Shown: positions 1,808 to 32,558, numbered from the stretch's first letter. The stretch is 64,000 nucleotides of DNA from IMGVR_UViG_3300033153_013547:62001-126000, one strand, 5' to 3'. Notes: generated by a model from the sequence alone, not told the origin. Made by a program: numbers and translations.

Positions 1808-1973
1808 GATTTCTTCCTTTTACACATTTTTCTACTGCAATGAAGACAAAACTATGTTCTATGGCATGAAGGAAAGGCTACCCATCACTGGCACAAAACA
1901 ACAAGAAATAGAGAGTAACAAGAGTAACAATAGTCCTGCTGAAATCAAGTAATTTATGAGTAAATCAGTTTGT

Positions 1974-2146
1974 GAATCAATGGATGAATTCTTGGATAAA
2001 AAAGGTAAATTAGGTGGTAAATCAGTAAATAGATCAATGGGGGGATGAATGGATGGATGAGTCAATGGATTCTTGAGTAAATTCTTCAATAAATCAATGG
2101 ATTCTTGGATGAATCAATGGATAAATCAATGGATAAATCAATGGAT
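1974..2146. repeat. cluster of ~7 short direct repeats, core TCAATGG(AT)
   Basis: Copies at ~1974, 2031, 2061, 2091, 2111, 2123, 2135; the last three are tandem at 12-bp period. Confidence 0.7.
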
Positions 2147-2275
2147 TCTGCTGTAAAAAAGGACTCATAGCAGCCTCTCTCAATCCATTCATTTCCTCAT
2201 TTTCCCATTCCTGCCCATATTTTTCCCATTCTCACCCACTCTATCCCCTGTTTTACCCACAAATTGACATTATTT

Positions 2276-12051: not shown

Positions 12052-12222
12052 CTAATCACTTGGGAAAATGGGATACCGTGGATCATCCAGATCCTGGGGG
12101 GGGTCTTCCACTTCATAATGTGGACACCCATCACAATCTGGGCCTACGATATCCGTCAAGCCACACACCGACTCGTTGTCGGATAGGCTAAACCACAGAT
12201 GGACACAGGCCTCTTTTTCCAT
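12052..12222 (-). CDS. 56-aa acidic Cys-containing mini-protein, not in ORF track; last cassette of array
   Basis: AAGGAGG SD supplied by repeat R1; MEKEACVHLW...DDPRYPIFPSD. Confidence 0.7.
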   Translation of the reverse strand: MEKEACVHLWFSLSDNESVCGLTDIVGPDCDGCPHYEVEDPPQDLDDPRYPIFPSD

Positions 12223-12227
12223 CTCTT

Positions 12228-12307
12228 TCCTCCTTCAAGAAAGAATCACTATGCATTCATCATGGCACAATGTAGCTTCATGGCCACCAGCTACTCGGCC
12301 AAGCAGT
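12228..12307 (-). repeat. array repeat R1 (pseudoknot + P3 hairpin + SD)
   Basis: GGCCGAGTAGCTGGTGGCCATGAAGCTACATTGTGCCATGATGAATGCATAG...AAGGAGG. Confidence 0.9.
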
Positions 12308-12631
12308 TTAGTCACGAGGATCTATAACCCCTTCGATTTCATAGTCATCAACCTCTTCGATTTCACGGTCATTATTATAATCATACGAAACTTCATCGAT
12401 CCCCACCCTGAAGAGTGGGGATCCTCCACCACACGCGTCGAGGAACGCCATCTTTACCTGATGGGGATTTTGCCAATCATCATCAGGTTCGATGATCTTA
12501 ACCCCCCGTGTACTTGCAACAATACGGCCACCGATCTCATCAATGGCAAGAAACGCAGGCTTGCCATCATCGGTAACCGACATGAATGCCCCATATGTTA
12601 AATTGAAGTAGTTGTTAAAAAACAGATTCAT
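12308..12631 (-). CDS. acidic hypothetical protein ending DPRD
   Basis: 107 aa, between R2 and R1. Confidence 0.75.
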   Translation of the reverse strand: MNLFFNNYFNLTYGAFMSVTDDGKPAFLAIDEIGGRIVASTRGVKIIEPDDDWQNPHQVKMAFLDACGGGSPLFRVGIDEVSYDYNNDREIEEVDDYEIEGVIDPRD

Positions 12632-12731
12632 CTCTTCCTCCTTAGAAAGAAATCATCACACTTTCGTAGTGATCAAGTGATCGGATGATCACACGTAGCT
12701 TCATGGCCACCAGCTACTCGGCCACACAGCT
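12632..12731 (-). repeat. array repeat R2 (pseudoknot + alternative GTGATC hairpins + SD)
   Basis: Near-identical to R9; shares the pseudoknot with R1/R5/R7/R8. Confidence 0.9.
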
Positions 12732-12887
12732 TTAGTCACGAGGATCCAGATCCAACTCAGGATCCAGATCCAAGACATCAACATCAACCCCCCATCTGCA
12801 ATCTTGTTGATAAACAAGATCGCACTCTTCTCCCTCGGAAAGGAGGCAAGTTATGCCATCCTTCCCTAGGTATTTGCATTTTTTCAT
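12732..12887 (-). CDS. 51-aa acidic Cys-rich mini-protein ending DPRD (start revised)
   Basis: MKKCKYLGKDG...LDLDPRD; the longer ORF-track start reads through repeat R3. Confidence 0.7.
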   Translation of the reverse strand: MKKCKYLGKDGITCLLSEGEECDLVYQQDCRWGVDVDVLDLDPELDLDPRD

Positions 12888-12984
12888 TTTTCTTCTCCCT
12901 TGCCCCAAAGCACAACTCTTTGGGGCAAATCGCCATGCATTCATCATGGCACAATGCAGCCACAGTGCTAACGGCTGCTCAGCT
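12888..12984 (-). repeat. array repeat R3 (pseudoknot + P3 + P4 + SD)
   Basis: GCTGAGCAGCCGTTAGCACTGTGGCTGCATTGTGCCATGATGAATGCATGGCGATTTGCCCCAAAGAGTTGTGCTTTGGGGC. Confidence 0.9.
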
Positions 12985-12990
12985 AAAATG

Positions 12991-13956
12991 TTAAACAGGC
13001 ACAATCGAGTCGCTTCCTGCCTGCAACCTGCGCCTGTTTCCCAACACGATCCCCTCTTTCGTGTTGGCGTAGCAGTAACTGCAAAGGTGTGGGCAGGTGT
13101 TATATTGCCCGATGTCTTTGCTGGCAGCGCATCCGCAGATGCGCCGCTGCCCTGAATCTTTCAGTCCGGCTGGAGTGCCGAAAAGTTTCAGCAGTGCCGG
13201 ATCATTATTTGAGATTCGGAGCAACAGCTCGTCATCGATACATTTGTTTGGCTCGATGCTTGGTTGCTGAAGATCGAGCGGCTCGGCGCAAGTCGCCAAT
13301 TTTAGCCCCCATTGCTGATTCAATCTTACCAAACCTGAAGCTGTCTCACGCATTAAAAATGGTGTGAAATCGAGCCATTTGACGCCCTTTGCCTTTAGGT
13401 TGTTTCGGACTTTACCATAAGCGTCCATATAACTGAAAACCAACTTTTCCGTATATGGATGCAATTGGTCGCCCACTCGTTTAACCTTTTCGAGAAGTCG
13501 CTCAACATTGAGCTCTTCTGTTAAGATTAGAGGATCGAAACGCCAAATCACTCTATGCTTGCCAAGACGGTTGGACAACTCTTGGAATGATTGAATGCGC
13601 GACTCCAGAGGCGGCACATTCGGTTCCAACGCGCCGCCATGGTCTGCGACATAGTCGTTGACCGTGAACTGGAAATAGTAGGCGACGCCTACTTGATCCA
13701 GCTTTTTAAGGTGTTTCATCAAGGGTTTTGGATTCTTACTCCAAAAAACGATGGCGCGCATACGCTCAAAGGAAACAAACTGGGATTTCCCATTAAAAGG
13801 ATTAACCCAGCGTGAATAGCCTTCTTCGAGTCGTCGCATAAACCAATCAGAATAAAAGGCTGGAATATCGGTAGATCGACTAGCCGATATAACTTCCGGC
13901 GCCACAGCCGTATGCACTCCACTGGATGTGGAGATTTCAGTTCTTTTCCACCTCAT
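12991..13956 (-). CDS. DUF1848 family protein (radical-SAM-like, C-terminal Cys cluster)
   Basis: ISASRSTDIPAFYSDWF, FWSKNP, WRFDP, CGCAASKDIGQYNTCPHLCSYCYAN. Confidence 0.88.
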   Translation of the reverse strand: MRWKRTEISTSSGVHTAVAPEVISASRSTDIPAFYSDWFMRRLEEGYSRWVNPFNGKSQFVSFERMRAIVFWSKNPKPLMKHLKKLDQVGVAYYFQFTVNDYVADHGGALEPNVPPLESRIQSFQELSNRLGKHRVIWRFDPLILTEELNVERLLEKVKRVGDQLHPYTEKLVFSYMDAYGKVRNNLKAKGVKWLDFTPFLMRETASGLVRLNQQWGLKLATCAEPLDLQQPSIEPNKCIDDELLLRISNNDPALLKLFGTPAGLKDSGQRRICGCAASKDIGQYNTCPHLCSYCYANTKEGIVLGNRRRLQAGSDSIVPV

Positions 13957-14050
13957 CTACTCTCCCTACCCCAAAGCACAACTCTTTGGGGCAAATCGCC
14001 ATGCATTCATCATGGCACAATGCAACTTCATTGCTATCAGTTGCTCAGCT
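13957..14050 (-). repeat. array repeat R4
   Basis: Same architecture; S2 stem variant GCAACT/AGTTGC. Confidence 0.9.
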
Positions 14051-14057
14051 AATTAAT

Positions 14058-14582
14058 TCACCAATTCTGTTGAACAAACGCCACAATGGCGTCAAAGGTG
14101 TTTAGATCAACATCTTTGACGCCATTGTTGCCAATGATGGTCAACGGAATCCCCAGGCCAAGGGCAATCCTTATCCCCTGGCCTGTACCACCAAGGCCCC
14201 GTTTGTTAGACGGAGCAGCAATTACAGAATCACAACCAAAAATGATTCTGTAATTCCTTCCGTGCAACTTCCTTGCCCCCATAGACAAATATCCTGGGGC
14301 AGGATGATATTTGTCAACGGAAGCAAAGGCCGCCTGGTCGCTCATGGACAAAACATGAACGACCTTGCAAAGGCCCTGGATTTGAGAATTGTACGACGGC
14401 CACGGCACATGACCTTCAGTACTTATTCCCAAATTTCTGGCATGCTCGATGGCAACTTTGTCAATACCATCAGCGCAGCCAGAGACAACTACAGACCCTT
14501 TATCAAGAGATTCTACAATCTCTCTGACAATGCGGATCTGGGGACCAGAGGGGTCTCTGGTCCCTATCACAGCAATCTTCAT
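14058..14582 (-). CDS. SLOG superfamily (DprA/Smf-like) nucleotide-binding protein
   Basis: IAVIGTR, VVSGCADGID, GGTGQGIRIALGLGIP. Confidence 0.75.
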   Translation of the reverse strand: MKIAVIGTRDPSGPQIRIVREIVESLDKGSVVVSGCADGIDKVAIEHARNLGISTEGHVPWPSYNSQIQGLCKVVHVLSMSDQAAFASVDKYHPAPGYLSMGARKLHGRNYRIIFGCDSVIAAPSNKRGLGGTGQGIRIALGLGIPLTIIGNNGVKDVDLNTFDAIVAFVQQNW

Positions 14583-14666
14583 TCCTTTTCTCCTTCAAAA
14601 AAGAATCGCCATGCATTCATCATGGCACAATGTAGCTTCATGGCCATCAGCTACTCGGCCAGGCAG
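14583..14666 (-). repeat. array repeat R5 (no P4)
   Basis: Close match to R1. Confidence 0.9.
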
Positions 14667-14673
14667 ACAATTG

Positions 14674-14934
14674 TTAATGAACAATCACTCCATCTTTCAC
14701 CCTTCTTAGGGCAAAGATGAAGTCATCGCCTTGCATATAGACGATGACCTTTACATCCGAGGTGTCGAAACACTCTATACTGGTCTCGACAAATTTTAAG
14801 GGATCGTTAAGGTACGCATCAGCGTCATTAACATCCAGCACCCATGTGCCGGTTATCGGGAGCCTAAACGCCTCCCGAATGATAACATGTGATCCCGGAC
14901 TTGCCGGGATCGTGGGGTATATAATTCTCCTCAT
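14674..14934 (-). CDS. hypothetical protein (start revised to MRRIIYP)
   Basis: AAGGAG SD of R6. Confidence 0.65.
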   Translation of the reverse strand: MRRIIYPTIPASPGSHVIIREAFRLPITGTWVLDVNDADAYLNDPLKFVETSIECFDTSDVKVIVYMQGDDFIFALRRVKDGVIVH

Positions 14935-14940
14935 CCCCAT

Positions 14941-15032
14941 CTCCTTTGCCCCAAAGCACAACTCTTTGGGGTAAAATCGCCATGTATTCATCATGGCACA
15001 ATGTAGCCTTATGACTATCGGCTGCTCAGTCA
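14941..15032 (-). repeat. array repeat R6
   Basis: S1 variant GACTG/TAGTC. Confidence 0.9.
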
Positions 15033-15039
15033 AGAGAAC

Positions 15040-15423
15040 TTAGGCAGAATCTCTGATCTTCATCAGGATCCTGCCCAGATGGTTCAGTCCAACTCCGTTG
15101 CTTACGCCCCAGAATTGGTCTCCCCACCAATTCTCTTCAACGATCTCCCCCTTTATGGCCTGAAGTTTGGCCATAAAGACAGGATCGCTGAACTTTTTAC
15201 TTACCAGATCCTCCATGATCTGGAGTTTGACCTGATCCCAGTCAGGCCTAAGCCTAACTGTTTTGCCAATCTTTTTGGCAATAAACCCGTTGGTCACACC
15301 AACGAATCTTGCCTGATCAGCAGGATCAGTACACTTTGCCTTCTGGTACTCCACCTCCACACAGTACCCTAACGAATTAGGACACATGTTGGACAGAAAC
15401 CAGAAGATGCCCCTGAATCTCAT
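15040..15423 (-). CDS. NADAR (YbiA-like) ADP-ribose/N-glycosidase
   Basis: FLSN, VEYQKAK, RPDWDQVKLQIM, KF, IVEENWWGDQFWG, GLNHLGRILMKIR; AAGGAGG SD. Confidence 0.9.
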   Translation of the reverse strand: MRFRGIFWFLSNMCPNSLGYCVEVEYQKAKCTDPADQARFVGVTNGFIAKKIGKTVRLRPDWDQVKLQIMEDLVSKKFSDPVFMAKLQAIKGEIVEENWWGDQFWGVSNGVGLNHLGRILMKIRDSA

Positions 15424-15433
15424 AATCACCTCC

Positions 15434-15847
15434 TTAGTGATATATCTCAACATTCAGATCAAGATCAGCCAGTTTATCAGACATCATCTGCCTAACCACT
15501 GGCCAATCCAGACCTCCAAGGCCACATCCAAGCCTGGGGAAGGCTATGGACCTAAAACTCCAGGTTTGGGTGGCAAAATCATCAAGACCATCAGAGATAT
15601 ACTCCAATTTGCTTGGATCTCTCCAATGATCCTTGGTGGGGAACAGTAGAACATTCTCCACCAAGATGACCTTGCCAGGCCTTAGAATGCCTGCAGAGCA
15701 TAGCCTGGCATACTCTGCAAACACCATGGGAAACCTTGCTTTGAACTCCAAGGCAAGACCCTTGCCCATCACGCCAACACAGTTGACGGGATTGACAAGA
15801 ACCTCACATTTGGAATCAAACAGATCCCCCCGCAGCAACAACAACAT
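15434..15847 (-). CDS. macrodomain ADP-ribosylhydrolase (DarG/Poa1/TARG1-like class)
   Basis: GDLF, VNPVNCVGVMGKGLALEFK, FPTKDHW, SIAFPRLGCGLGGLDW. Confidence 0.9.
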   Translation of the reverse strand: MLLLLRGDLFDSKCEVLVNPVNCVGVMGKGLALEFKARFPMVFAEYARLCSAGILRPGKVILVENVLLFPTKDHWRDPSKLEYISDGLDDFATQTWSFRSIAFPRLGCGLGGLDWPVVRQMMSDKLADLDLNVEIYH

Positions 15848-15951
15848 CTCCTCCTCCTTTACCCCAAAGCACAACTCTTTGGGGTAAAATCGCCATGTAT
15901 TCATCATGGCACAATGTAGCTTCATGGCCACCAGCTACTCGGCCAAGCAGT
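15848..15951 (-). repeat. array repeat R7
   Basis: GGCCG-type pseudoknot + P3 + P4. Confidence 0.9.
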
Positions 15952-16155
15952 TTAATCACGAGGATATCTGATGACATCATTCATGGTATCATGGTCAATA
16001 TCAGCAGATATCGTCTTGATTGCTTCCAACTTGATGAAAGCGCACAGAAGTCCCCGCACTTCTTCGATTTCATCAAATAAAATCTTGCTCCGATGAAAGA
16101 GCAAGACTATCGTCACCACAAGGGCGGCGATAATAATCGACATTAATAACAACAT
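15952..16155 (-). CDS. 67-aa membrane-anchored protein ending YPRD (start revised)
   Basis: MLLLMSIIIAALVVTIVLLF hydrophobic N-term; SD from R8. Confidence 0.7.
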   Translation of the reverse strand: MLLLMSIIIAALVVTIVLLFHRSKILFDEIEEVRGLLCAFIKLEAIKTISADIDHDTMNDVIRYPRD

Positions 16156-16258
16156 CTCCTCCTCCTTTACCCCAAAGCACAACTCTTTGGAGCAAAATCG
16201 CCATGTATTCATCATGGCACAATGCAGCTTCATGGCCACCAGCTACTCGGCCAAGCAG
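16156..16258 (-). repeat. array repeat R8
   Basis: Near-identical to R7. Confidence 0.9.
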
Positions 16259-16561
16259 TTACTTCTTCTGCTTTTCAACCCATTCCTTTATCACGTCTCC
16301 GTGACAAGGGCTGGGTTTGCAAAAGCAGACAAGGGTCTTCCCATCAAGTTCAAGCACCCTCCTCTTGAACTCGGGGTCAGACCCCAATCTGCTCAGGAAG
16401 TACTCCCTATACTTAGGTAGGGAGCTACCCCCTGAGCCGGGGAATGGATTCCCAAAATATCCATCCATTCCCCTACCAGCCCTTCCTATGTAAACATAGG
16501 AAGGGTCATCGCGCCACCCCTTAGGGGCGTCGCGAATATTAATAACGTTGATAGGCAACAA
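16259..16561 (-). CDS. DUF4326 family protein
   Basis: YVYIGR...FGNPF...LDGKTLVCFCKPSPCHGDVI; AAGGAGG SD favours TTG at 16561 (ORF track start 16594). Confidence 0.85.
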   Translation of the reverse strand: MLPINVINIRDAPKGWRDDPSYVYIGRAGRGMDGYFGNPFPGSGGSSLPKYREYFLSRLGSDPEFKRRVLELDGKTLVCFCKPSPCHGDVIKEWVEKQKK

Positions 16562-16629
16562 AATCACCTCCTTTTGTTGCCGGTCAATCGACACGGTTTC
16601 GGCAGACCACGTGTCATTCTGCAGACAAA

Positions 16630-17070
16630 TTACATGAAATCTCCCACAATCAGGTCACCCTTCTTGTGGGAGATTTTCTTCCCCCTTGGTCGGGGCGCAG
16701 GCACCTTCTTGGCGGGCACCTTCTTGGCAGGTGCCTTAACCTCTCTGGGCCACTTGCAATAATGCTTGACTGGCCCAGAGGCAGGCCGCTCTGCTGTTGC
16801 TGCCACCACTTCCACAGCAACAGCCTTTTTCACAGTAGGCCCAACCACATCATGGATGAGCCTACTGCAACACAGCTGCTTCCTGAGACGAAGTATTGCC
16901 TCGCCTCCGTCCACGCCTGTGGGGATCGTGCCCCTCCAACCGGGAACACGTTCCCCGTTGAGGTAGGCTTCACAGTACTGAAGCCCACCCCTTTCAAACA
17001 GGGGGGAGAATTTAATCTTTACCCTCTTCCCCCCCAACAAAATGTCAGGGGGACGAATCAAATTAGGCAC
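16630..17070 (-). CDS. hypothetical protein with basic PAKK tail
   Basis: AAGGAG SD, GTG start; KAPAKKVPAKKVPAP repeat. Confidence 0.65.
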   Translation of the reverse strand: MPNLIRPPDILLGGKRVKIKFSPLFERGGLQYCEAYLNGERVPGWRGTIPTGVDGGEAILRLRKQLCCSRLIHDVVGPTVKKAVAVEVVAATAERPASGPVKHYCKWPREVKAPAKKVPAKKVPAPRPRGKKISHKKGDLIVGDFM

Positions 17071-17143
17071 AGTAACACACTCCTTTCTGCCAGGTATATC
17101 CTGGATCAGATGAGCAGTTTATTGTCTTGCTCAGGACACAATG

Positions 17144-17464
17144 TTATAAACCAAGTTCCTCCCTGACACGATCCCTATTGACGGGATAAATGTTTATCTC
17201 ATCTATCCCATCAATAGAAACCCTGAACAATTGCCAGGGGCCCCCATCTGCTGGGATGAACCAGTATAGAGGATTATACCCCTTGGCTTCCTCAAACTCC
17301 TTCGCTGCTCTTCCGAACAGCGAATTCTTCCGGGGATTTTGTTGCCAAACTTCTCCCCAAATCTGCCCTATTGGCTTGGCAGATTTGAGCATCACCCCAG
17401 AAATGGTGGCTCTTGGTGCGGAGCAGACCGCCTTACGCACCAAGGCAATAATTTTCTCTTCCAT
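17144..17464 (-). CDS. hypothetical protein
   Basis: SD from R9. Confidence 0.75.
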   Translation of the reverse strand: MEEKIIALVRKAVCSAPRATISGVMLKSAKPIGQIWGEVWQQNPRKNSLFGRAAKEFEEAKGYNPLYWFIPADGGPWQLFRVSIDGIDEINIYPVNRDRVREELGL

Positions 17465-17562
17465 TTTTCCTCCTTAGAAAGAAATCATCACACTTTCGTA
17501 GTGATCAAGTGATCGGATGATCACGCGTAGCTTCATGGCCATCAGCTACTCGGCCATACAGT
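17465..17562 (-). repeat. array repeat R9 (R2 type)
   Basis: Near-identical to 12632-12731. Confidence 0.9.
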
Positions 17563-17645
17563 TTAGTCACGAGGGTCCAGAATGTCACCATGGCTTGTTG
17601 TCAGCCAGAAATGGCTTTCAACCCATAGACCAATGCCCCAACTGA

Positions 17646-18611
17646 CTAAATTCCCCGTGCCCAGAGAGCGTTCCGGCGCGCTTCTTTTTCGGCGCGCGCC
17701 TTTTCAACTCGTTCGCGAAGCTCCGGGGGAACATAGCCCGGCGTGTCGGGCGGTTCCGTAGCAGACACCGTAAATGTCTGCAGGAAAACGCTCGCGTACT
17801 CTTCCACCTGTTCGAGGGACAGCTCGACCCCCGAACGCAGCTCTTTGGGCAACTGGTAATCCAGATCAACTTCCACCACTCTCTCGGCGTGAACCGCGAT
17901 GTGTGGCGGGAGGCTGCCTTGCGTGGTATAAACGTCCTTCCCCATCACGTCATCCACTGCGGCATTCTCCACGACTGGCGTTCCCTTTGTCACCAGTCCT
18001 ATTTTCTCCAGATACGTCACGAACGCCGGATGGCGCGTGACGATGATGTTCCCATTTTCCATGGGAACAATATCCGACGCCCTGAGCAAATCTGACGCGA
18101 TGAAAGAGTACGCCTTGAGCTCACCGCTCGCGTACTCTTCCACCTGTTCAAGGGTCAGTTCGACCCCAGAACGCAGTTCATCGGGTAAATCGAGCGTGAG
18201 CTCGATTAACTTTTCTGAATACACCGCCAAGTGCAGGGGAATATACCCCTGCGTGGTGTAAACAGACCTTAAGGGACCGAGAGGTATCCCCGTCATGTCA
18301 TGACGGCTCCGCACATTCTTGAGCCACGTCACACGCCGTGCGCTGCCGAATGTGTGGATCTTCGCAAAATAACGCGCCACTGCGAGGTGGCGCGAAACGA
18401 CAAGATCTTTCGGCGGATAAATCTCCACTAGTCGGACAACGCGCGACTCGCCCTCCTCCAGGTAATTCCCGTAGGAATCCTGGACGGAACCCGAGGCTAT
18501 CGTCGTTCGATAGCCGTGCTCGATATCTATGGGGCCGCACCGGCGACCCTTGAAGTCCCTGATTTTCTCAAGCCTAGCCTCATTCCAGGCTTGAAACTCC
18601 TTCTCATTCAT
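17646..18611 (-). CDS. tandem two-domain Csx16-like (Cas_VVA1548) putative ring nuclease
   Basis: Two repeats of VV(S/T)RH...G(Y/S)(I/L)PxH(L/I)A...LPxELRSGVEL(T/S)LEQVEEYA. Confidence 0.7.
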   Translation of the reverse strand: MNEKEFQAWNEARLEKIRDFKGRRCGPIDIEHGYRTTIASGSVQDSYGNYLEEGESRVVRLVEIYPPKDLVVSRHLAVARYFAKIHTFGSARRVTWLKNVRSRHDMTGIPLGPLRSVYTTQGYIPLHLAVYSEKLIELTLDLPDELRSGVELTLEQVEEYASGELKAYSFIASDLLRASDIVPMENGNIIVTRHPAFVTYLEKIGLVTKGTPVVENAAVDDVMGKDVYTTQGSLPPHIAVHAERVVEVDLDYQLPKELRSGVELSLEQVEEYASVFLQTFTVSATEPPDTPGYVPPELRERVEKARAEKEARRNALWARGI

Positions 18612-18668
18612 ATCAATCTCTCCTTGCCCTGCACTAGCCGCGGCAGGGCTTCGCGGTTGTGTGTTACC

Positions 18669-18953
18669 CTATGCAAACTGCACGATGTACGCCACGGGCG
18701 TGCTGGCGTATTCGCGCACTTGCTCAAGGGTCAGCTCGACCCCCCTCATCTCCGCCGGAATATCCAGCGGAACTTCGATCACTCGCCGCGCATGCACGGC
18801 GAGCCGAAGAGGAAGAACGCCGAAAACGTTCTTCCCCATTACATCGTCGACCGTGGCATGTGCCACGATGGGCGTGCCTTCCGGCACTAACCCTATCTCG
18901 ATCAAATACGTCACCAATGCTGGGTGACGCGTAACAACAATACTTTTATTCAT
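18669..18953 (-). CDS. csx16: Csx16-like (Cas_VVA1548) putative cOA ring nuclease, 94 aa (start revised)
   Basis: IVVTRHPA...GVLPLRLA...LDIPAEMRGVELTLEQV fits the Csx16 pattern hhsRHpgA...GtLPxhLA...LdlPxexRGxELs. Confidence 0.75.
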   Translation of the reverse strand: MNKSIVVTRHPALVTYLIEIGLVPEGTPIVAHATVDDVMGKNVFGVLPLRLAVHARRVIEVPLDIPAEMRGVELTLEQVREYASTPVAYIVQFA

Positions 18954-19048
18954 CTCTTCTCCTTTACCCCAAAGCACAACTCTTTGGGGCAAATCGCCAT
19001 GTATTCATCATGGCACAATGCAGCCACAGTGCTGTCGGCTACTCAGCT
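18954..19048 (-). repeat. array repeat R10
   Basis: Same architecture as R3. Confidence 0.9.
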
Positions 19049-19086
19049 GTGGGGGGCGATCCTGTTTCGATGTTGACAGGATCCAT

Positions 19087-19117
19087 AAAAAAAGAGAGAG
19101 GCCCGAAGGCCCCTCTC
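19087..19117 (-). terminator. rho-independent terminator (copy 1)
   Basis: GAGAGGGGCC-TTCG-GGCCTCTCTC + T7. Confidence 0.85.
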
Positions 19118-19120
19118 CGA

Positions 19121-19210
19121 TGATGCCTATATTTCTCCTTTCCCGGCATCAGGGAGTTTCACCACTATGCAGGTGACGCATACATTTTGTTTATCCAGAT
19201 GTAAACTGGA
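19121..19210 (-). ncRNA. candidate structured RNA, three tandem H-type pseudoknots (copy 1)
   Basis: TCCAG/CTGGA + TACAT/ATGTA; TGC/GCA + TCACC/GGTGA; TCCC/GGGA + TGATGCC/GGCATCA; covaries with copy 2. Confidence 0.55.
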
Positions 19211-19234
19211 ATCCGGTTTTGAAAGGGGAGGGGG

Positions 19235-19690
19235 TTACTCTATTATTGGGAGGACATCCCCTTCTTCAAAGTCATACTGCCACGGATCATAATCCGTGGC
19301 AAGACCAATTGCTGTGACCATGTCTTTTGCGACGATCACAGCAAACCCCTGAAATTCCTCGCCCCCATCGTAGGGGACGAGGAACCCCCCGGGTTCCTTT
19401 TCTTCCGGACACTCCGGAAGGTTGGGGGCAAGTTTTCTTGCCCCCAACTGAAGGGTCCTCCAGACGGAGGTTTTTACTCCGTCTAGAAACCCTGACTCCC
19501 CACGTAAAATGGGGTAAAACACGCTAGTCGCTGCAGCGGCCAGCGTGCTCGCTCCTCCGGCTCTCATGAGCCGGAAGTACGAAATATTGCCGCTAACAGC
19601 AACTGGGCACCACGTCCTGTGGAGGGGCAGACACTGCCCATACCCCTCCACAGGGCGTAAAAAGACCGATAGCCAAAAAATTTTAGCCAT
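19235..19690 (-). CDS. hypothetical protein, paralog of 19972..20442 (start revised)
   Basis: MAKIFWLSV...FRLMRAGGA...LVPYDGGE. Confidence 0.75.
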   Translation of the reverse strand: MAKIFWLSVFLRPVEGYGQCLPLHRTWCPVAVSGNISYFRLMRAGGASTLAAAATSVFYPILRGESGFLDGVKTSVWRTLQLGARKLAPNLPECPEEKEPGGFLVPYDGGEEFQGFAVIVAKDMVTAIGLATDYDPWQYDFEEGDVLPIIE

Positions 19691-19696
19691 TCCCAT

Positions 19697-19787
19697 CTCC
19701 CTTACCCCAAAGCACAACTCTTTGGGGTAAAATCGCCATGTATTCATCATGGCACAATGCAACCACAGTGCTAACGGCTGCTCAGCT
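19697..19787 (-). repeat. array repeat R11
   Basis: Same architecture as R3. Confidence 0.9.
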
Positions 19788-19825
19788 GTGGGGGGCGATC
19801 CTGTCTCGATGTTGACAGGATCCAT

Positions 19826-19857
19826 AAAAAAAAGAGAGAGGCCCGAAGGCCTCTCTC
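19826..19857 (-). terminator. rho-independent terminator (copy 2)
   Basis: GAGAGAGGCC-TTCG-GGCCTCTCTC + T8. Confidence 0.85.
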
Positions 19858-19860
19858 CGG

Positions 19861-19952
19861 TGATACCTATATTTCTCCTTTCCCGGTATCAGGGAGTTTC
19901 ACCACTATGCAGGTGACGCATACATTTTGTTTATCCAGATGTAAAAACTGGA
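19861..19952 (-). ncRNA. candidate structured RNA, three tandem pseudoknots (copy 2)
   Basis: TGATACC/GGTATCA compensatory change; a 2-nt insertion falls in a loop. Confidence 0.55.
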
Positions 19953-19971
19953 ATCCGATTTTGAAAAGGGG

Positions 19972-20442
19972 TTACCCTATTATCGGGATAATATCCCGAT
20001 AATCCGTAGCAAAGTCGTCTCGCCACAGATCGTAATCTATGGCGAGATCAATCGCCGTGGTCGCATTTTTTGCGACTACGACGACAAACCCCTCGAATTC
20101 GCCCCCATCGTAGGGGACGAGCACTTTGCAGAATACCCCGGAACGTTCCGGGATATCGGGGGCAAGCAAAGCTACCCCCACCTGCATTGTTCTCCGGACA
20201 AATGTTACCCACTTGTCTAGAGAATTTACCTCGCTCAAGAGCCAATCCGCATTTGTTAAAATGGGATAAAATATACTAGCCACTATAGCGGTTAGTATAT
20301 CCGCTCCTCCGGCTCTCATGAGCCGGAAGTGCGAAACGCCGTCGCTTTCAGCGACGACGTTCCATGACTCATTATCGGGGGGGTTTTCTTTAAACCCCTC
20401 GATCTTGTCGAGTAAAACTGACAGCCAAAAGATCTTGGCCAT
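19972..20442 (-). CDS. hypothetical protein, paralog of 19235..19690 (start revised)
   Basis: Shared motifs; SD from R12. Confidence 0.75.
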   Translation of the reverse strand: MAKIFWLSVLLDKIEGFKENPPDNESWNVVAESDGVSHFRLMRAGGADILTAIVASIFYPILTNADWLLSEVNSLDKWVTFVRRTMQVGVALLAPDIPERSGVFCKVLVPYDGGEFEGFVVVVAKNATTAIDLAIDYDLWRDDFATDYRDIIPIIG

Positions 20443-20537
20443 CTCCTCCTCCTTTGCCCCAAAGCACAACTCTTTGGGGCAAATCGCCATGTATTCATCA
20501 TGGCACAATGCAACTTCATTGCTATCAGTTGCTCAGC
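20443..20537 (-). repeat. array repeat R12
   Basis: R4-type pseudoknot + P3 + P4 + AAGGAGGAGG. Confidence 0.9.
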
Positions 20538-20628
20538 GTCATATCGCAGATTTCCTAACCGGTGTCTGCCAACCGGCCACAGCCAAAATAGTGACTGTGG
20601 CCACCGCCTACGTTGCGGAGGCGGTGGT

Positions 20629-27073: not shown

Positions 27074-27604
27074 ATGCCAGACATAAAAGAATATACAAGT
27101 ATTGATCCTAATGTAAAGTTTTTGGGTGCTGCTACTGTGCACTCTTTTACTAGTATAGATGGAGATGTAGTGATTGGAGACAATACCACAATATGGCAAT
27201 CTACAAATATTGCAGGCAAAGTTTCCGTAGGCTCAAATTGTGTAATTGGTTCTCAGTGCTCAATTCTGGGCACCAAGATGCCCACAATCATTGGCAAACA
27301 TGTTCGTATGCAGTCTCATTGTTTTATTCCTGATGGCACAGTAATTGGAGACAACACCTTTCTTGCCCCTGGGGTTACGATTTTGAACGATAAATATCCC
27401 CCATCATCCAGTCACAAAGATTGGAGTCCCGTAACAATCGAAAATGGGGCACGTATAGGCGGAGGAGTAGTCATTTTACCCGGCGTCACCATTGGCAAGG
27501 GTGCTCTGGTGGGGGCAGGTTCGGTTGTGACCAAGGACGTTATTCCCAACTCTGTGGTCAAAGGAAGCCCAGCAAGGATTTGGGTGATACCATCCCTTGA
27601 ATAA
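27074..27604 (+). CDS. hexapeptide-repeat sugar N-acetyltransferase (WbpD/WlbB-like)
   Basis: Left-handed beta-helix repeats; NDKYP; [29 protein letters not shown]. Confidence 0.88.
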
Positions 27605-28439
27605 TAAAACATTTGCCATATCTGGATTGGGTAGCATATCCCCACGTCATTTGGAAGCCGTGAAGCATATTGGGGGCATCATTCTTGACGTACATGATCC
27701 TGATTGGAGCAAATCATATTTTTATGGAAGGCAGGCAGTCTTTCACAAATCCATTGAAAGCATGCTTGAAAAATCAGAAGCAGAATGGTTTGTCATTTTG
27801 TCTCCCAGTAAATACCACTTTTCTCAATCTATGAAAGCCCTGGATCTGGGCAAGAAAGTTATAGTAGAAAAACCTGCTGCTATGACTCTATATGACGTTC
27901 TACAATATTCTGGACGAGAAATCTATACCGTATCACAACTACGATATCTCGACGACATTATCAACATCAAAAATAAAATATCTACAGGTCACCATGATGT
28001 AAACATCAAGATCATAGCACACAGGCATCCCATAACCATGGCAAACTGGAGACATGACATAAATTGGTCTGGTGGGCTAATGTATTTCGTAGGCATTCAT
28101 TACATAGACTTAGTCACTTGGTTGTTTGGCAAGATGGAAAAATTAGAACAAGTTACTTGGCTAAACAAACAAAAGTGCCAATTTAGTATGGAGTTAGAAA
28201 GAGCCACAGTCAATGCCAGCTTTGAAATTACTGAAACCCAACCAAACCACAAGAGCATGATCATAGATGATATAGAAATAGATTTGGCTGCCAAGTTTTA
28301 TGATTTACATTGTTATTTATATGAAGATATAATGGCAGGACATGGCATTCATCCAATGGATGTATATCATACTATGGAGATTATTCATAAGATTAATGGC
28401 TATGCCAATGAAGGATATGGCTACAATGCTTCTAAATAA
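27597..28439 (+). CDS. Gfo/Idh/MocA oxidoreductase (WbpB/WlbA-like)
   Basis: [33 protein letters not shown]. Confidence 0.85.
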
Positions 28440-29389
28440 GCAGCTATATTTTCATGGGCATTAGCAGGGGGAACAATAATTTCTAAATTACCAGCCCTAA
28501 ATGACCTAATAGCATTGGCCAAATACTCACTACTATATCCCACTATTATACCATAGCCTGTGTCTATAATTGCTTGGTGTTCTGTGTTACTACGAGGAAT
28601 AATTACTGTCTTACCCAACCAATAAGCCTCACGTTGAATGCCGCCGGAATCTGTTGCAACAAATTCAGAATTGACTAACAGAGAAACAAGTCTCTTGTGT
28701 GATATAGGATCTATAAGCCTTATATTTTTGGGTATCAATAAACCAAACTCTTGTATTCTTGCCTTGGTTCTTGGATGAATGGGCCAAACAAAACTATATT
28801 CCTCACAAGTTCCTATGGCATGCAAAACAGATGATAGTCTTGCTCTATTGTCCACCAATTCTGCTCTATGAAGGGTTATAAGATTTTCATTACTTGTGCT
28901 ATAAGGATCCAAATCATATGACATAATTTTGTCATAGACAGGATCTCCAACAATAGTGGAATTATGCAAACCTTCCTTAGATAAATTCCTTTGACAATAT
29001 TTGTCAGTGCACAACAAATGATCTGCCATTTTATCCACAGACATTCTAATCCTTTCTTCTATGGCTTCGTTGTCATAACACCTCATTCCTGCTTCAATAT
29101 GTACTAACGTTTTGTTGCACATTTTAGCACAAATAGCTCCAGCAAGAGTGCTTCTTGTGTCTCCTAAAACACAGATGATTTTGGGATTGATATCATTGAC
29201 AATTTCTATTGCTGCATCTATGGTTTCCCCCAAGCTGGTTTTCAGCAAATTGTAATCACAATTCACTGCATCATGTATGTCATTGAGATTAGCATCATAG
29301 TGCTGACCAGTATTTACTATAATACTAGCCCAAAGTCTGGATAATTTCAATAATTCAGGACGTGTGCCTATGATTGTTAGGACTTTCAT
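28421..29389 (-). CDS. UDP-N-acetylglucosamine 2-epimerase (WecB/WbpI-like)
   Basis: GTRPE, TGQHYD, LGDT, HIEAGMR, TLHRAE, HPRT, TDSGGIQREA. Confidence 0.92.
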   Translation of the reverse strand: MKVLTIIGTRPELLKLSRLWASIIVNTGQHYDANLNDIHDAVNCDYNLLKTSLGETIDAAIEIVNDINPKIICVLGDTRSTLAGAICAKMCNKTLVHIEAGMRCYDNEAIEERIRMSVDKMADHLLCTDKYCQRNLSKEGLHNSTIVGDPVYDKIMSYDLDPYSTSNENLITLHRAELVDNRARLSSVLHAIGTCEEYSFVWPIHPRTKARIQEFGLLIPKNIRLIDPISHKRLVSLLVNSEFVATDSGGIQREAYWLGKTVIIPRSNTEHQAIIDTGYGIIVGYSSEYLANAIRSFRAGNLEIIVPPANAHENIAAYLEAL

Positions 29390-29398
29390 TTGTGTCTC

Positions 29399-30280
29399 CT
29401 AAAACGTATCAAAAGTATCTGGATATACTTTATTGGGTAAGTTCTTTCTTATTCGCAACTGAGACCATTGCTTATCATAGTTGAGTAAAGAGACTTCTTT
29501 GCTTATTCTATCAACGGTCTGTGCCACATTGTCTCCACAATATACTTTTACATTATAATCCATTGTTTGGGAATCTATTTCTAGTGCCCAGTTCTGATCA
29601 CCCAACTTCCATCCACCCTGAGAATTGTCTACATCCCATAAAAAGGTACCAAGACTATAAGCAATAATACCATCTCTATATCTTTCAATGCCAGAAGGAA
29701 TGTGTGGGTGGGCTCCAGCAATAATATCTGCCCCCCAATCAATAATATCATGGGCCAATCTTTTTTGAGATGGTAATGGATAAGGTTCTCCCTCATATCC
29801 CCAGTGTAAGGACACAATGATGGTGTCACAAGACTTTCTAATTAGATTGATATCTCTTCTGATTTCTTGACGCTTGATGTCTCTTGCCCCCACTCCATCA
29901 AGATGACCAGAAGTTGTCATTGGCCAAACATGCCATGAATAGGCCAGTAAACCAACACCATTGGTAATATTATACGTCCCATCCCCAAACACACCAGTAT
30001 AACCCACTCCCCACTGATCAAGATATTTTTTAGTAATATCTACCCCCTCTTTGCCAAAATCATAAATATGATTATTAGCAAGCGATACTGTAGTGAGATT
30101 CATATTCTTTATGGGTTCTGGAGCAGACCGTATACCAAATCTCCATGACCATCTTGGTGTCGGGTGCAAGGTTGTTCCGCCAAGTGGTCCTTCTAAATTG
30201 GCAAAAACATAGTCAGATTCAGGTTGATAGGGAGATTCTTGTTTCCTGGAACAAATATCGCCTATTAATATAATTTTCAT
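29399..30280 (-). CDS. CapA/PGA_cap family metallophosphoesterase
   Basis: GD, NLEGP, SLANNHIYDFG, SLHWGYE, GAHPH, YSLG. Confidence 0.88.
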   Translation of the reverse strand: MKIILIGDICSRKQESPYQPESDYVFANLEGPLGGTTLHPTPRWSWRFGIRSAPEPIKNMNLTTVSLANNHIYDFGKEGVDITKKYLDQWGVGYTGVFGDGTYNITNGVGLLAYSWHVWPMTTSGHLDGVGARDIKRQEIRRDINLIRKSCDTIIVSLHWGYEGEPYPLPSQKRLAHDIIDWGADIIAGAHPHIPSGIERYRDGIIAYSLGTFLWDVDNSQGGWKLGDQNWALEIDSQTMDYNVKVYCGDNVAQTVDRISKEVSLLNYDKQWSQLRIRKNLPNKVYPDTFDTF

Positions 30281-30295
30281 TATTGTTTTCTCCTA

Positions 30296-31531: not shown

Positions 31532-31532
31532 G

Positions 31533-32558
31533 TTACTTGCCTACCAGCTTACCACCACAACACAATCGTTGACAAGGAGGAGGAAACCCATTCTCGATAA
31601 TAAAATTATTGAGTTCTGTAAGAGCCTTGGTATCTAAAACAAGGGGAGGACCAATATTTCCGAATACTCTTGTGTCAAAACACCTACCACCAGCAGGTAT
31701 TGTGCCATCGGGATTGATGGCCAGTCTTTGCCCTGCAAGCAAGGCAGAAATTATTCTACAACCATTACGTCCCGACGCAACAAACTTTGTGGGAGATTCT
31801 TGATAATATTCTTTGAGATCTGATAAGGTAGATAATTTTGGATAGCAATAAGGGAACAATTTATGCTTAGTCAATTGCTCAAATATTTTATTACAGTTCA
31901 TTTGATGTATTTGTTCTTCTGTATATCCAGAGATATTTGCTGGTTTACACACACCCCCTGGCGCATCAAAATTACACGACAATGGAGACACATAATTATA
32001 GTGATTGAAAACCATTTGATGAATGCCAAGGGTTTTGGTAATAAACACATGCATTGCACCCAAATGCATGTAATTATCTGGGGTAATGGCTAGGGAAATT
32101 CTTATGGTCTTATATTTGAACTTTTTCTTCAGCAATAGAATTCCATTTATAGCTCTATCAAATGATCCATCAACTCCACGTATTTTATCATGAATATCTG
32201 CAGTAGGCCCATCTAAACTTACTGCCAATGAATCAATGTGTTTGGCAATTGTCCCAGCATACTTTTCAAGATACCAACCATTAGTTGTCATACTTATAGA
32301 TATTGGCCCCTTGAGATGTGAACGCAAACTAGCACACAATTCATCAAACTTTTTGTATAGTAGTGGTTCAGCACCCAGAATGGCTATGGCTTTCACATCT
32401 AATTGCTTGAGCCCATTTATCCATTCTTCAGGCTCCAATTCATGAGCACCTGGAATCCATGTGCCACCAAAACCAGACGCATCATGCTGACCCTGTCCAA
32501 TATCACACATTTTGCATCGTAAATTGCATCTATTAGTAATGATCATGCTGACATTCAT
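31533..32558 (-). CDS. radical SAM protein with SPASM/twitch-like C-terminus
   Basis: CNLRCKMC, GAEPLL, TTNG, VSLDG..HDKIRG. Confidence 0.9.
   Translation of the reverse strand: MNVSMIITNRCNLRCKMCDIGQGQHDASGFGGTWIPGAHELEPEEWINGLKQLDVKAIAILGAEPLLYKKFDELCASLRSHLKGPISISMTTNGWYLEKYAGTIAKHIDSLAVSLDGPTADIHDKIRGVDGSFDRAINGILLLKKKFKYKTIRISLAITPDNYMHLGAMHVFITKTLGIHQMVFNHYNYVSPLSCNFDAPGGVCKPANISGYTEEQIHQMNCNKIFEQLTKHKLFPYCYPKLSTLSDLKEYYQESPTKFVASGRNGCRIISALLAGQRLAINPDGTIPAGGRCFDTRVFGNIGPPLVLDTKALTELNNFIIENGFPPPCQRLCCGGKLVGK

What the first reader, a model, noticed from the sequence alone, without database searches (positions are those of the whole stretch)
15040..15847. Macrodomain + NADAR two-gene cassette: orphan antitoxin pair against DNA ADP-ribosylation
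Seen: the two genes are 10 nt apart between R7 and R6, with no ADP-ribosyltransferase nearby. Known: DarG macrodomains remove thymidine-ADP-ribose (DarT2) and NADARs remove guanine-ADP-ribose (DarT1); DarTG systems are anti-phage. Inference: one cassette could neutralise both DarTG types. The SLOG and DUF4326 cassettes nearby may extend an NAD/ADP-ribose conflict module.
Basis: partly seen in the sequence, partly recalled or inferred. Interest (0 to 1): 0.68.

Follow-up and report, generated by a model that had tools for sequence, protein, structure and literature searches.

The report
Phage macrodomain–NADAR anti-DarT gene pair
An uncultured jumbo phage carries, as one two-gene unit, a copy of the DarG antitoxin's macrodomain and a NADAR enzyme, the two enzyme types that phages such as T4, phiKZ and Bas32 use to strip ADP-ribose off their DNA and escape DarTG defence; it is a tidy new example of a known trick, not a new kind of system.

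Summary
Window 15434-15847(-) encodes a 137-aa macrodomain and 15040-15423(-) a 127-aa NADAR. They are separated by 10 nt (GGAGGTGATT, a Shine-Dalgarno site) and exactly fill the space between two copies of a ~100-nt repeat. No ADP-ribosyltransferase was found within about 10 kb.

- **Macrodomain:** it is a true DarG2-type domain. It is about 50% identical to the Thermus DarG macrodomain, and catalytic N22 and K80 are kept as N22 and K72. Its closest cellular relatives are full-length DarG proteins directly downstream of DarT. It lacks the DarT-binding C-terminal half.
- **NADAR:** it has the NADAR fold (pLDDT 96) and the catalytic residues E23, K30 and E96. It is 37% identical to AdfN of phage Bas32, which has been shown to neutralise DarTG1.
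- **Interpretation:** AdfN (2025) and AdfM (2025/2026) are published. T4 carries both, unlinked. Macro, NADAR, SLOG and DUF4326 fusions in viruses were described in 2022.
- **What is particular here:** the bicistronic linkage, and the setting in a GC-rich island of orphan antitoxin-like genes, each unit headed by a structured repeat. That repeat is the more unusual feature.

No activity has been tested.

The parts
15848..15950 (-). Leader repeat copy upstream of the macro gene. It has a pseudoknot-like 5' module (15917-15946), a hairpin GCCAUG..CAUGGC (inside 15890-15916), a hairpin CCCCAAAG..CUUUGGGG (15862-15884) and a Shine-Dalgarno stretch (15848-15861).
   Evidence: Searches show the repeat family. 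One search shows covariation in the 5' module. In one search the RNA folds at -39.6 kcal/mol (z -3.9), with the 5' end pairing to the SD region.
15434..15847 (-). Orphan DarG2-type macrodomain (AdfM-like), 137 aa. N22 and K72 correspond to Thermus DarG N22 and K80.
   Evidence: Pfam Macro. PDB 5M31 at 2.5e-31 and 5M3I at 2.2e-30. PADLOC DarG at 3.3e-52, covering profile positions 1-143 of 329. NCBIfam antitoxin_DarG at 171 bits; the closest cellular relatives are DarG next to DarT; 33% identity to phiKZ AdfM.
15424..15433 (-). 10-nt spacer GGAGGTGATT carrying the NADAR ribosome-binding site. The two genes form a bicistron.
   Evidence: One search found no strong intrinsic terminator between or inside the two genes; its one weak terminator-like match (15416-15400) and one borderline promoter-like match (15450-15422) near the junction are at chance level.
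15040..15423 (-). NADAR ADP-ribosylglycohydrolase (AdfN-like, YbiA/Glu type), 127 aa, with catalytic E23, K30 and E96. It has a 6-residue deletion in the N-terminal hairpin.
   Evidence: Pfam NADAR; clade alignment with invariant residues. AF2 pLDDT 96.1. Foldseek finds only YbiA (TMq 0.82) and the P. nicotianae NADAR (TMq 0.77); residue mapping; 37% identity to Bas32 AdfN.
14941..15039 (-). Next copy of the leader repeat. It begins directly after the NADAR stop and heads the following unit (ORF 14674-14940). It marks the downstream boundary of the two-gene unit.
14058..14582 (-). Context: SLOG/DprA-like cassette, which resembles the ShosA and PsyrA antitoxins.
   Evidence: Pfam DNA_processg_A at 8e-10 and SLOG cluster4 weak. 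PADLOC ShosA at 1.6e-10 and PsyrA at 8e-6; phrog_768.
16259..16594 (-). Context: DUF4326 cassette.
   Evidence: Pfam DUF4326 at 4.9e-16; phrog_464; a DUF4326-NADAR fusion (P0334) in a phage-like contig.

Best explanation
The two genes are one bicistronic unit of a phage anti-defence island. They encode two complementary erasers of nucleobase ADP-ribosylation. The first is a stand-alone copy of the DarG2 antitoxin's macrodomain. It should hydrolyse ADP-ribose from thymine in single-stranded DNA, the mark written by DarT2, as AdfM does in phiKZ and T4. The second is a NADAR glycohydrolase of the clade that includes AdfN of phage Bas32. It should remove ADP-ribose from guanine, the mark written by DarT1. 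Made together from one structured leader, they would clean the replicating phage DNA so that either type of DarTG abortive defence fails. Shown here: gene structure and coupling, family membership, intact catalytic residues, the NADAR fold, orphan status, kinship of the macrodomain to real DarT-linked DarG, and recurrence of the pairing as neighbours and fusions. Inferred: enzymatic activity, base specificity, timing of expression, and that the unknown host carries DarTG.
For: Macrodomain: about 50% identical to the Thermus aquaticus and M. tuberculosis DarG macrodomains (E 2.5e-31 and 2.2e-30), with the next family at 3.7e-5. N22 and K72 align with the DarG catalytic N22 and K80 (residues named in PMC13309987). 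PADLOC DarG scores 3.3e-52. NCBIfam antitoxin_DarG gives 171 bits, against 138 for the validated phiKZ AdfM. Its closest cellular relatives, at 44-57% identity, are 360-376-aa DarG proteins directly downstream of Pfam DarT. NADAR: Pfam score is above the cutoff. The AF2 model has pLDDT 96 and matches only YbiA and the P. nicotianae NADAR-ADPr structure. E23, K30 and E96 map to the catalytic residues described in PMC11543638. It is 37% identical over its full length to bas32_0066, which is AdfN-Bas32. PMC11825919 shows that AdfN-Bas32 neutralises DarT1 and restores plaquing. Linkage: 10-nt spacer with an SD, equal GC of 47.8% and 47.7%, a DarG-like macro within 3 kb of a related NADAR in 4 of 79 other viral loci, and a NADAR-macro fusion, P0338. 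Context: the neighbouring units resemble other antitoxins or immune-signal degraders, namely ShosA/PsyrA-like and Csx16. Precedent: T4 needs AdfN against DarTG1 and AdfM against DarTG2.
Against: No biochemical or genetic test was possible. The host is unknown, so the presence of DarTG in it is unknown. The NADAR is of the YbiA/Glu type. E. coli YbiA hydrolyses G-ADPr in vitro but does not rescue DarT1 toxicity in cells (PMC11125620), so activity in vivo cannot be assumed from the fold. The NADAR also carries a 6-residue deletion relative to most relatives. The closest relatives of each gene are usually unlinked: no partner lay beside them. So the pairing is recurrent but not conserved. Comparative genomics (PMC9503650) read the same Macro/NADAR/SLOG/DUF4326 association as acting on small ADP-ribose derivatives rather than on DNA.
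Confidence: 0.55

Rival explanations
1. The pair, together with the nearby SLOG and DUF4326 genes, processes soluble NAD-derived molecules such as immune signals or toxic ADP-ribose derivatives, rather than modified DNA. This would blunt NAD/ADPr-based signalling or toxicity.
For: PMC9503650 proposes this for the Macro/NADAR/SLOG/Nudix/DUF4326 association in DNA viruses. SLOG-like genes lie within 3 kb of related NADARs in 3 of 79 loci. A DUF4326-NADAR fusion sits two genes from a YAcAr/SLOG gene. Both SLOG and DUF4326 units sit within 1 kb of the pair.
Against: The macrodomain's nearest cellular kin are DarG proteins coupled to the DNA-modifying DarT. Tested phage homologues of both proteins act on ADP-ribosylated DNA (PMC11825919, PMC13309987).
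Confidence: 0.15
2. The physiological substrates are ADP-ribosylated RNA bases. The TARG1/DarG-like macrodomain would act on uracil and the NADAR on guanine or cytosine, countering RNA-targeting ADP-ribosyltransferase toxins.
For: TARG1-like macrodomains, including bacterial ones, reverse U-ADPr (PMC13036486). NADARs reverse G-ADPr on RNA (PMC11833690). YbiA-type NADARs reverse C-ADPr (PMC12945103). The window NADAR is YbiA-type.
Against: No phage defence that writes U-, G- or C-ADPr on RNA was found in the papers read here. The DNA role has direct phage genetics behind it.
Confidence: 0.1
3. The genes are ordinary metabolic or housekeeping accessories. The NADAR would be a YbiA-like N-glycosidase of riboflavin intermediates and the macrodomain a generic ADP-ribose-1''-phosphate phosphatase, with no defence role.
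For: TIGR02464 (riboflavin-intermediate N-glycosidase) is a weak hit at 35.7 bits against a cutoff of 73.7. Depositors often annotate phage homologues as 'phosphatase', 'swarming motility protein' or 'GTP cyclohydrolase II'.
Against: Scores are below the curated cutoffs. AdfN-Bas32 has the same family profile and is a proven anti-DarTG1 factor. The macrodomain is DarG-type, not MacroD/Poa1p-type. The genes sit in an island of antitoxin-like genes.
Confidence: 0.07
4. The pair protects the phage or the infected cell from the phage's own ADP-ribosyltransferase, as self-immunity or to reverse phage-made marks.
For: In T4-like phages NADARs are expressed with the phage ARTs (PMC9503650). The remaining ~197 kb of the contig, and ORFs of the window lying more than ~10 kb from the pair that were not among the 20 larger ones scanned, were not scanned for ARTs.
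Against: No ART domain was found in the island or within about 10 kb, nor in the 20 larger ORFs elsewhere in the window that were scanned.
Confidence: 0.05

Closest known systems
AdfM, anti-DarT factor macro (phiKZ gp104 and other chimalliviruses, PMC13309987; T4 Tk.4, bioRxiv 10.1101/2025.11.20.689424)
   Same: A phage-encoded stand-alone macrodomain of DarG2 type with the catalytic Asn and Lys. It has no DarT partner and no DarT-binding domain. It is 33% identical to phiKZ gp104 and hits the same NCBIfam DarG model.
   Different: It is closer to bacterial DarG (about 50% identity, 171 bits) than phiKZ AdfM is (138 bits), and very far from T4 Tk.4 (18% identity). No sign of a phage nucleus was looked for. 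Here it is translationally linked to a NADAR. It has not been tested.
AdfN, anti-DarT factor NADAR (T4 gp30.3, Bas32, Bas60; PMC11825919)
   Same: A phage-encoded orphan NADAR. It is 37% identical over its full length to AdfN-Bas32, with the same NCBIfam and Pfam profile.
   Different: No detectable sequence similarity to T4 gp30.3. It is shorter, at 127 aa against 149 aa, because of a hairpin deletion. It is encoded directly after a macrodomain. It has not been tested.
DarTG2 toxin-antitoxin system (DarT2 plus DarG; PDB 5M31, 5M3I, 7OMU)
   Same: The macrodomain is the same enzyme module as the N-terminal half of DarG.
   Different: There is no toxin gene and no C-terminal DarT-binding half (profile positions 144-329 are absent). 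It is phage-borne. It is therefore not a TA system but a captured antitoxin domain.
DarTG1 (DarT1 plus BC4488-type NADAR; PMC11543638)
   Same: The NADAR fold, with Glu and Lys equivalents of E. coli C7 E88 and K95.
   Different: The last-strand catalytic residue is Glu (YbiA type), not the Asp of DarT1-linked NADARs (PMC11125620). There is no N-terminal extension and no DarT1 neighbour.
Macro/NADAR/SLOG/DUF4326 fusions and neighbourhoods in DNA viruses (Iyer, Burroughs and Aravind 2022, PMC9503650)
   Same: The same set of domains, clustered. Fusions were recovered again here: P0338 is NADAR+Macro and P0334 is DUF4326+NADAR.
   Different: Here the domains are separate proteins in separate or shared repeat-bounded units. 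That paper favoured small-molecule substrates, whereas later experiments favour DNA.
PeSL regulatory cassettes of T4-type phages (PMC2839356, PMC4122927), as the nearest analogue of the repeat that bounds the unit
   Same: Repeated intergenic regulatory motifs flanking variable accessory genes in a hyperplastic region of a large phage.
   Different: The repeat here is about 100 nt and has no recognisable sigma-70 promoter. It has a covarying pseudoknot-like module plus two hairpins and includes the ribosome site. Exact-match scans with its three sequence motifs recovered no other copy of it: the two motifs run on IMG/VR hit only this contig, and of the two run on metagenome contigs one found nothing and the other only chance matches.

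Membership tests
DarG (DarTG2 antitoxin) | N-terminal macrodomain of the DarG/TARG1 class with the catalytic Lys (Thermus K80) and Asn (N22) | tested here: met
   5M31 at 2.5e-31, with N22 and K72 aligned to N22 and K80. PADLOC DarG at 3.3e-52. NF048014 at 171 bits.
DarG (DarTG2 antitoxin) | C-terminal DarT-binding domain (full length about 330-375 aa) | tested here: not met
   The protein ends at residue 137. The profiles are matched only over 1-143 of 329 and 4-146 of 338, with the score below the 250-bit full-length cutoff.
DarG (DarTG2 antitoxin) | Adjacent DarT toxin gene | tested here: not met
   No Pfam DarT or other ART domain in the island or within about 10 kb. By contrast the cellular relatives have DarT directly upstream.
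AdfM (phage orphan anti-DarTG2 macrodomain) | Phage-encoded stand-alone DarG2-like macrodomain with an intact active site | tested here: met
   Phage context is shown.
AdfM (phage orphan anti-DarTG2 macrodomain) | Removes DarT2-made ADP-ribose from ssDNA and protects the phage from DarTG2 | not testable with these tools
   This needs an enzyme assay and plaque assays.
NADAR superfamily | NADAR/YbiA fold | tested here: met
   Pfam scores 46.3 bits against a cutoff of 35.1. The AF2 model has pLDDT 96.1. Foldseek's only significant hits are YbiA 2B3W (TMq 0.82) and NADAR 8BAU (TMq 0.77).
NADAR superfamily | Catalytic Glu and Lys (E. coli C7 E88 and K95) and an acidic residue in the last strand (P. 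nicotianae E125) | tested here: met
   E23, K30 and E96 are invariant in the clade alignment. E23 and E96 align with the residues corresponding to P. nicotianae E43 and E125 (numbering from PMC11543638). K30 was matched to E. coli C7 K95 only by the conserved seven-residue Glu-to-Lys spacing, because the C7 sequence was not aligned here.
AdfN (phage orphan anti-DarTG1 NADAR) | Homology to an experimentally validated AdfN | tested here: met
   37% identity and E 8e-27 to bas32_0066 over residues 3-124. There is no similarity to T4 gp30.3.
AdfN (phage orphan anti-DarTG1 NADAR) | Hydrolyses guanine-ADPr on DNA and restores phage growth on DarTG1 hosts | not testable with these tools
   This needs an enzyme assay and plaque assays.
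DarG1 (DarT1-associated BC4488-type NADAR antitoxin) | Asp in the last-strand catalytic position, and a DarT1 neighbour | tested here: not met
   The position holds Glu (E96, YbiA type). No DarT is nearby.
YbiA-type housekeeping N-glycosidase (TIGR02464) | Score above the curated equivalog cutoff | tested here: not met
   35.7 bits against a cutoff of 73.7. The fold and the Glu-type active site are nevertheless shared.

The most novel reading that the evidence does not exclude
The pair is a deliberately coupled broad-spectrum nucleobase de-ADP-ribosylation module. The macrodomain would handle thymine and uracil, and the YbiA-type NADAR would handle guanine and cytosine. It would be one unit of a phage cassette array in which every unit is headed by the same structured RNA leader. 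That leader would serve as both a common regulatory switch and the recombination handle by which orphan antitoxin-like genes are collected and shuffled, functionally akin to an integron or PeSL array dedicated to counter-defence.
Probability: 0.15. Interest if true: 0.7.

Novelty: new member of a known kind. Interest (0 to 1): 0.35.

Why it matters
It adds an environmental jumbo-phage example to the newly described AdfM and AdfN counter-defences. It also shows them fused into a single expression unit, which argues that DarTG1 and DarTG2 are met together often enough in nature to select for a combined antidote. The two short, well-behaved proteins are closer to bacterial DarG, and simpler than the tested phage versions, so they are convenient reagents for testing base specificity (T/U against G/C). 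The surrounding island groups DarG-, ShosA/PsyrA- and Csx16-like genes behind one repeated structured leader. That makes it a useful place to look for further orphan-antitoxin counter-defences and for how phages assemble them.

Tried and rejected
- **Nucleotide matches to cultured phages:** blastn of the island and of the portal region found nothing.
- **RNA families:** Rfam at gathering and at permissive thresholds found no family for the repeat or anything else credible. No tRNAs were found.
- **Integron attC reading of the repeat:** rejected. No integrase was found beside the array, I saw no R''/R' core-site motifs on reading the sequence, and the repeat includes the ribosome site and start codon.
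- **Repeat elsewhere:** the exact 27-mer and 19-mer cores occur in IMG/VR only in this contig. The hairpin-3 23-mer has no match in metagenome contigs. The 33 metagenome matches to the 19-mer are chance hits in unrelated sequence.
- **Conserved operon with the partner gene:** not found beside the closest relatives of either protein.
- **L088:** it has an ORF directly after its NADAR that hit my DarG-like HMM only weakly (3.6e-6). It is not a Pfam Macro and is unlike T4 Tk.4, so it was not counted.
- **T4 homologues:** gp30.3 shows no similarity to the window NADAR. Tk.4 is only 18% identical to the macrodomain.
- **Macrodomain tree:** unresolved at the base. It shows only that orphan and DarT-linked macrodomains intermingle.
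- **DUF4326 fold:** the AF2 model has pLDDT 86. Foldseek found nothing. The VIA wide search put NADAR structures first at Z 5.3 and 4.7, with many dual-specificity phosphatases at Z 3-4. All are too weak to decide, and profile-profile comparison with the NADAR clade gave no similarity.
- **Complex prediction:** not run, because no claim is made that the two proteins bind each other.

Full report
**What the window is.** The 64-kb window is part of IMG/VR contig IMGVR_UViG_3300033153_013547, which is 261 kb long. Window coordinate plus 62003 gives the contig coordinate. It is a large tailed phage. It encodes a portal, PhoH, and a class II ribonucleotide reductase carrying an intein with a LAGLIDADG endonuclease. 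The portal is 25-27% identical to those of Bacillus jumbo phages of the 0305phi8-36 type. There is no nucleotide match to any cultured phage. The host is unknown.

**The observation.** On the minus strand, 15434-15847 encodes a 137-aa macrodomain and 15040-15423 a 127-aa NADAR protein. Both score above the Pfam gathering cutoffs. The macro start codon follows AAAGGAGGAGGAG. The macro stop TAA and the NADAR ATG are 10 nt apart, and the spacer GGAGGTGATT is itself a ribosome-binding site. The two genes and this spacer fill all 808 nt between two copies of a repeat of about 100 nt. They have the same GC content, 47.8% and 47.7%, against 38.5-41% in the flanking phage genome. Pfam found no ADP-ribosyltransferase in the island proteins tested or in ORFs of about 110 aa or more within roughly 10 kb.

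**The macrodomain.**
- Its best solved relatives are the macrodomains of Thermus aquaticus DarG (5M31, E 2.5e-31, about 50% identity) and M. tuberculosis DarG (5M3I, 2.2e-30). The next family scores only 3.7e-5.
- Residues N22 and K72 align with DarG N22 and K80. PMC13309987 names these as the active-site residues.
- The PADLOC DarG model gives 3.3e-52 but is matched only over positions 1-143 of 329.
- NCBIfam antitoxin_DarG gives 171 bits over positions 4-146 of 338. That is more than the validated phiKZ AdfM obtains (138 bits), but below the full-length cutoff.
- The protein is thus the enzymatic half of DarG without the DarT-binding half.
- A scan of one genome per species found 17 cellular relatives at 38-57% identity. 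The better ones are 360-376-aa proteins that begin with the macrodomain. In five of the six loci checked (Lachnospiraceae, Ignavibacteria, Zixibacteria) the gene directly upstream is a Pfam DarT, with E 1e-36 to 1e-43.
- Stand-alone homologues of about 143 aa are very numerous, with more than 5,500 clusters in the length range searched. Those inspected sit in phage-like contigs with no DarT and no NADAR beside them.
- A tree mixes the orphan and DarT-linked forms without resolution. T4 Tk.4 lies very far away.

**The NADAR.**
- Its closest relatives, at 46-47% identity, are orphan genes in phage contigs near replication genes.
- More than 515 IMG/VR contigs and 447 cultured phage records carry relatives.
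- A profile of the clade finds 32,624 cluster representatives in 1.84 billion proteins.
- In the clade alignment E23, K30, E96, N98, W100, D102, W105 and G106 are invariant. The window protein has a 6-residue deletion in the N-terminal hairpin, and one relative has a deletion of the same size.
- AlphaFold2 gives pLDDT 96.1. The only significant structural matches are E. coli YbiA (TMq 0.82) and the Phytophthora NADAR bound to ADP-ribose (TMq 0.77).
- Profile alignment to these structures puts E23 and E96 on the two glutamates that hold the distal ribose (P. nicotianae E43 and E125). K30 is matched to the conserved lysine (E. coli C7 K95) by its seven-residue spacing from the Glu; that sequence was not aligned here (PMC11543638).
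- By the Glu in the last strand it is YbiA-type. It is neither the Asp type found next to DarT1 nor the His type of T4 gp30.3 (PMC11125620). It shows no similarity to gp30.3.
- It is 37% identical over its full length (E 8e-27) to bas32_0066 of phage IrisVonRoten, which is AdfN-Bas32. According to PMC11825919, AdfN-Bas32 neutralises DarT1 in E. coli, restores plaquing of three sensitive phages on DarTG1, and has no effect on DarTG2.

**Is the pairing meaningful?**
- Each family occurs in under 1% of cultured phage records.
- Of 79 other viral loci carrying a related NADAR, four have a clear DarG-like macro on the same strand within 3 kb. These represent three independent cases.
- Three loci have a SLOG-like gene and three have a DUF1848-like gene in the same range.
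- Among the 148 best NADAR representatives, P0338 is a NADAR-Macro fusion and P0334 is a DUF4326-NADAR fusion. P0334 lies in a phage-like contig two genes from a YAcAr/SLOG gene.
- The association is therefore recurrent and sometimes fused, but it is not a conserved operon.
- This repeats, on independent data, what Iyer, Burroughs and Aravind reported in 2022 (PMC9503650).

**How it most likely works.** The literature now gives a direct model. DarT2 ADP-ribosylates thymine and DarT1 ADP-ribosylates guanine in single-stranded DNA. Each antitoxin enzyme reverses only its own mark (PMC11543638, PMC11125620). Phages escape with orphan copies: AdfN, a NADAR, against DarTG1 (PMC11825919), and AdfM, a macrodomain, against DarTG2 (PMC13309987). 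T4 needs both, encoded about 68 kb apart (bioRxiv 10.1101/2025.11.20.689424). The window's unit encodes close analogues of both behind one leader. The best explanation is therefore a combined antidote to both DarTG types. I put this at about 0.55, because nothing was assayed and in-cell rescue is known to vary among NADARs. The main rival is action on soluble ADP-ribose derivatives. That was the 2022 interpretation, and the SLOG and DUF4326 neighbours fit it. RNA substrates are also possible, because TARG1-like macrodomains reverse U-ADPr and YbiA-type NADARs reverse C-ADPr (PMC13036486, PMC12945103).

**Context.**
- The pair lies in an island at about 12.05-20.56 kb. Its GC is 49.9%, all its genes are on the minus strand, and it is divided into 12 units of one to three ORFs by the repeat.
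- Recognisable units are: DUF1848 (a PADLOC model tied to defence reverse transcriptases), a DprA/SLOG-like protein resembling the ShosA and PsyrA antitoxins, DUF4326, and three Csx16 domains in two proteins. Csx16 is a ring nuclease family of type III CRISPR loci (bioRxiv 10.1101/2024.09.24.614671).
- The island thus reads as a collection of antitoxin-like and signal-degrading genes, which supports a counter-defence role for the pair.

**The repeat.**
- Its 5' module, present in 12 copies, can form an H-type pseudoknot or two alternative hairpins. In the proposed structure 91% of cells are paired, against 79% in shuffles and 16-54% when the partners are slid. Five of the ten pairs change on both sides, and some G-U pairs occur, which fits RNA.
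- This module is followed by an invariant hairpin, in most copies by a second hairpin, and then by the ribosome site and start codon.
- The copy upstream of the macro gene folds at z -3.9, with its 5' end paired to the Shine-Dalgarno region.
- No Rfam family matches it, and no other contig carrying it was found.
- I regard this as the more unusual feature of the region, but it is outside the finding I was given.

**Verdict.** Novelty is low: this is a new member of the known AdfM and AdfN kinds, with bicistronic linkage as the only new twist.

Noticed in passing
window 12193-20583, minus strand; 12 copies with 5' modules starting at 20537, 19786, 19047, 17554, 16251, 15943, 15030, 14659, 14049, 12983, 12722 and 12299: A leader repeat of about 100 nt heads every unit of the island. 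It has a 27-30-nt module that can form an H-type pseudoknot and shows covariation (5 of 10 pairs change on both sides, and G-U pairs occur). Next comes an invariant hairpin GCCAUG-AUGAAUR-CAUGGC followed by GAUUUU, then in 8 copies the hairpin CCCCAAAG..CUUUGGGG, then the SD and ATG. Two copies (12722, 17554) carry a different 3' module. No Rfam family matches it, and exact-match scans of IMG/VR and metagenome contigs found it in no other contig.
   Followed up: partly
window 12052-20555: The island has 49.9% GC, against 38.5-41% around it. Its recognisable genes are DarG macro, NADAR, a ShosA/PsyrA-like DprA/SLOG protein, DUF4326, DUF1848 and Csx16. It looks like a collection of orphan antitoxin-like and signal-degrading counter-defence genes of foreign origin.
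   Followed up: partly
window 17646-18611(-) and 18669-18965(-): A 321-aa protein with two Csx16 (Cas_VVA1548) domains sits next to a 98-aa single-domain paralogue, with internal DNA repeats between them. Csx16 is a ring nuclease family of type III CRISPR loci, so these are candidate phage anti-CRISPR ring nucleases.
   Followed up: no
window 12991-13956(-): A DUF1848 protein (Pfam 4.8e-92) also matches the PADLOC model RTasDUF1848, which is tied to defence reverse transcriptases. Weak DUF1848-like ORFs lie within 3 kb of related NADARs in three other viral loci: L081, L084 and L089.
   Followed up: no
window ends of ORFs at 12308, 12732 and 15952, and non-coding near 17575: Several unrelated cassette ORFs end in the same ...(D/Y)PRD* tail, because about 15 nt (GGATCCTCGTGACTAA) upstream of the leader is part of the repeat in some copies. 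One such copy is non-coding. This suggests recombination junctions inside coding ends.
   Followed up: no
window 18900-20600: Two or three neighbouring units are recent duplicates. The repeats are 93-97% identical, the paralogous ORFs 19235-19696 and 19972-20442 share 76% identity over 99 nt, and each of two of them follows a strong intrinsic terminator (19858-19833 and 19118-19093, minus strand).
   Followed up: no
window 41225-44446(+) and 53323-56220(+): The class II ribonucleotide reductase is interrupted by an intein with a LAGLIDADG homing endonuclease. A second large ORF of 965 aa also holds an intein splicing domain.
   Followed up: no
window 27074-40201: A run of glycan-type biosynthesis genes lies in a phage: a hexapeptide acyltransferase, a GFO/IDH/MocA oxidoreductase, UDP-GlcNAc 2-epimerase, PGA_cap, a radical SAM enzyme, a glycosyltransferase and an MptE-like protein. 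The target could be virion or DNA modification, but this is unknown.
   Followed up: no
window 1951-2157: A dense array of short direct repeats (units like GATGAATCAATGGAT at 12- and 20-nt spacing) lies in an AT-rich stretch and resembles iterons.
   Followed up: no
window 15848-15931: The public gene call for the macrodomain (163 aa, P0016) starts at a GTG inside the leader repeat. Homologues and the ribosome site support the 137-aa form.
   Followed up: yes
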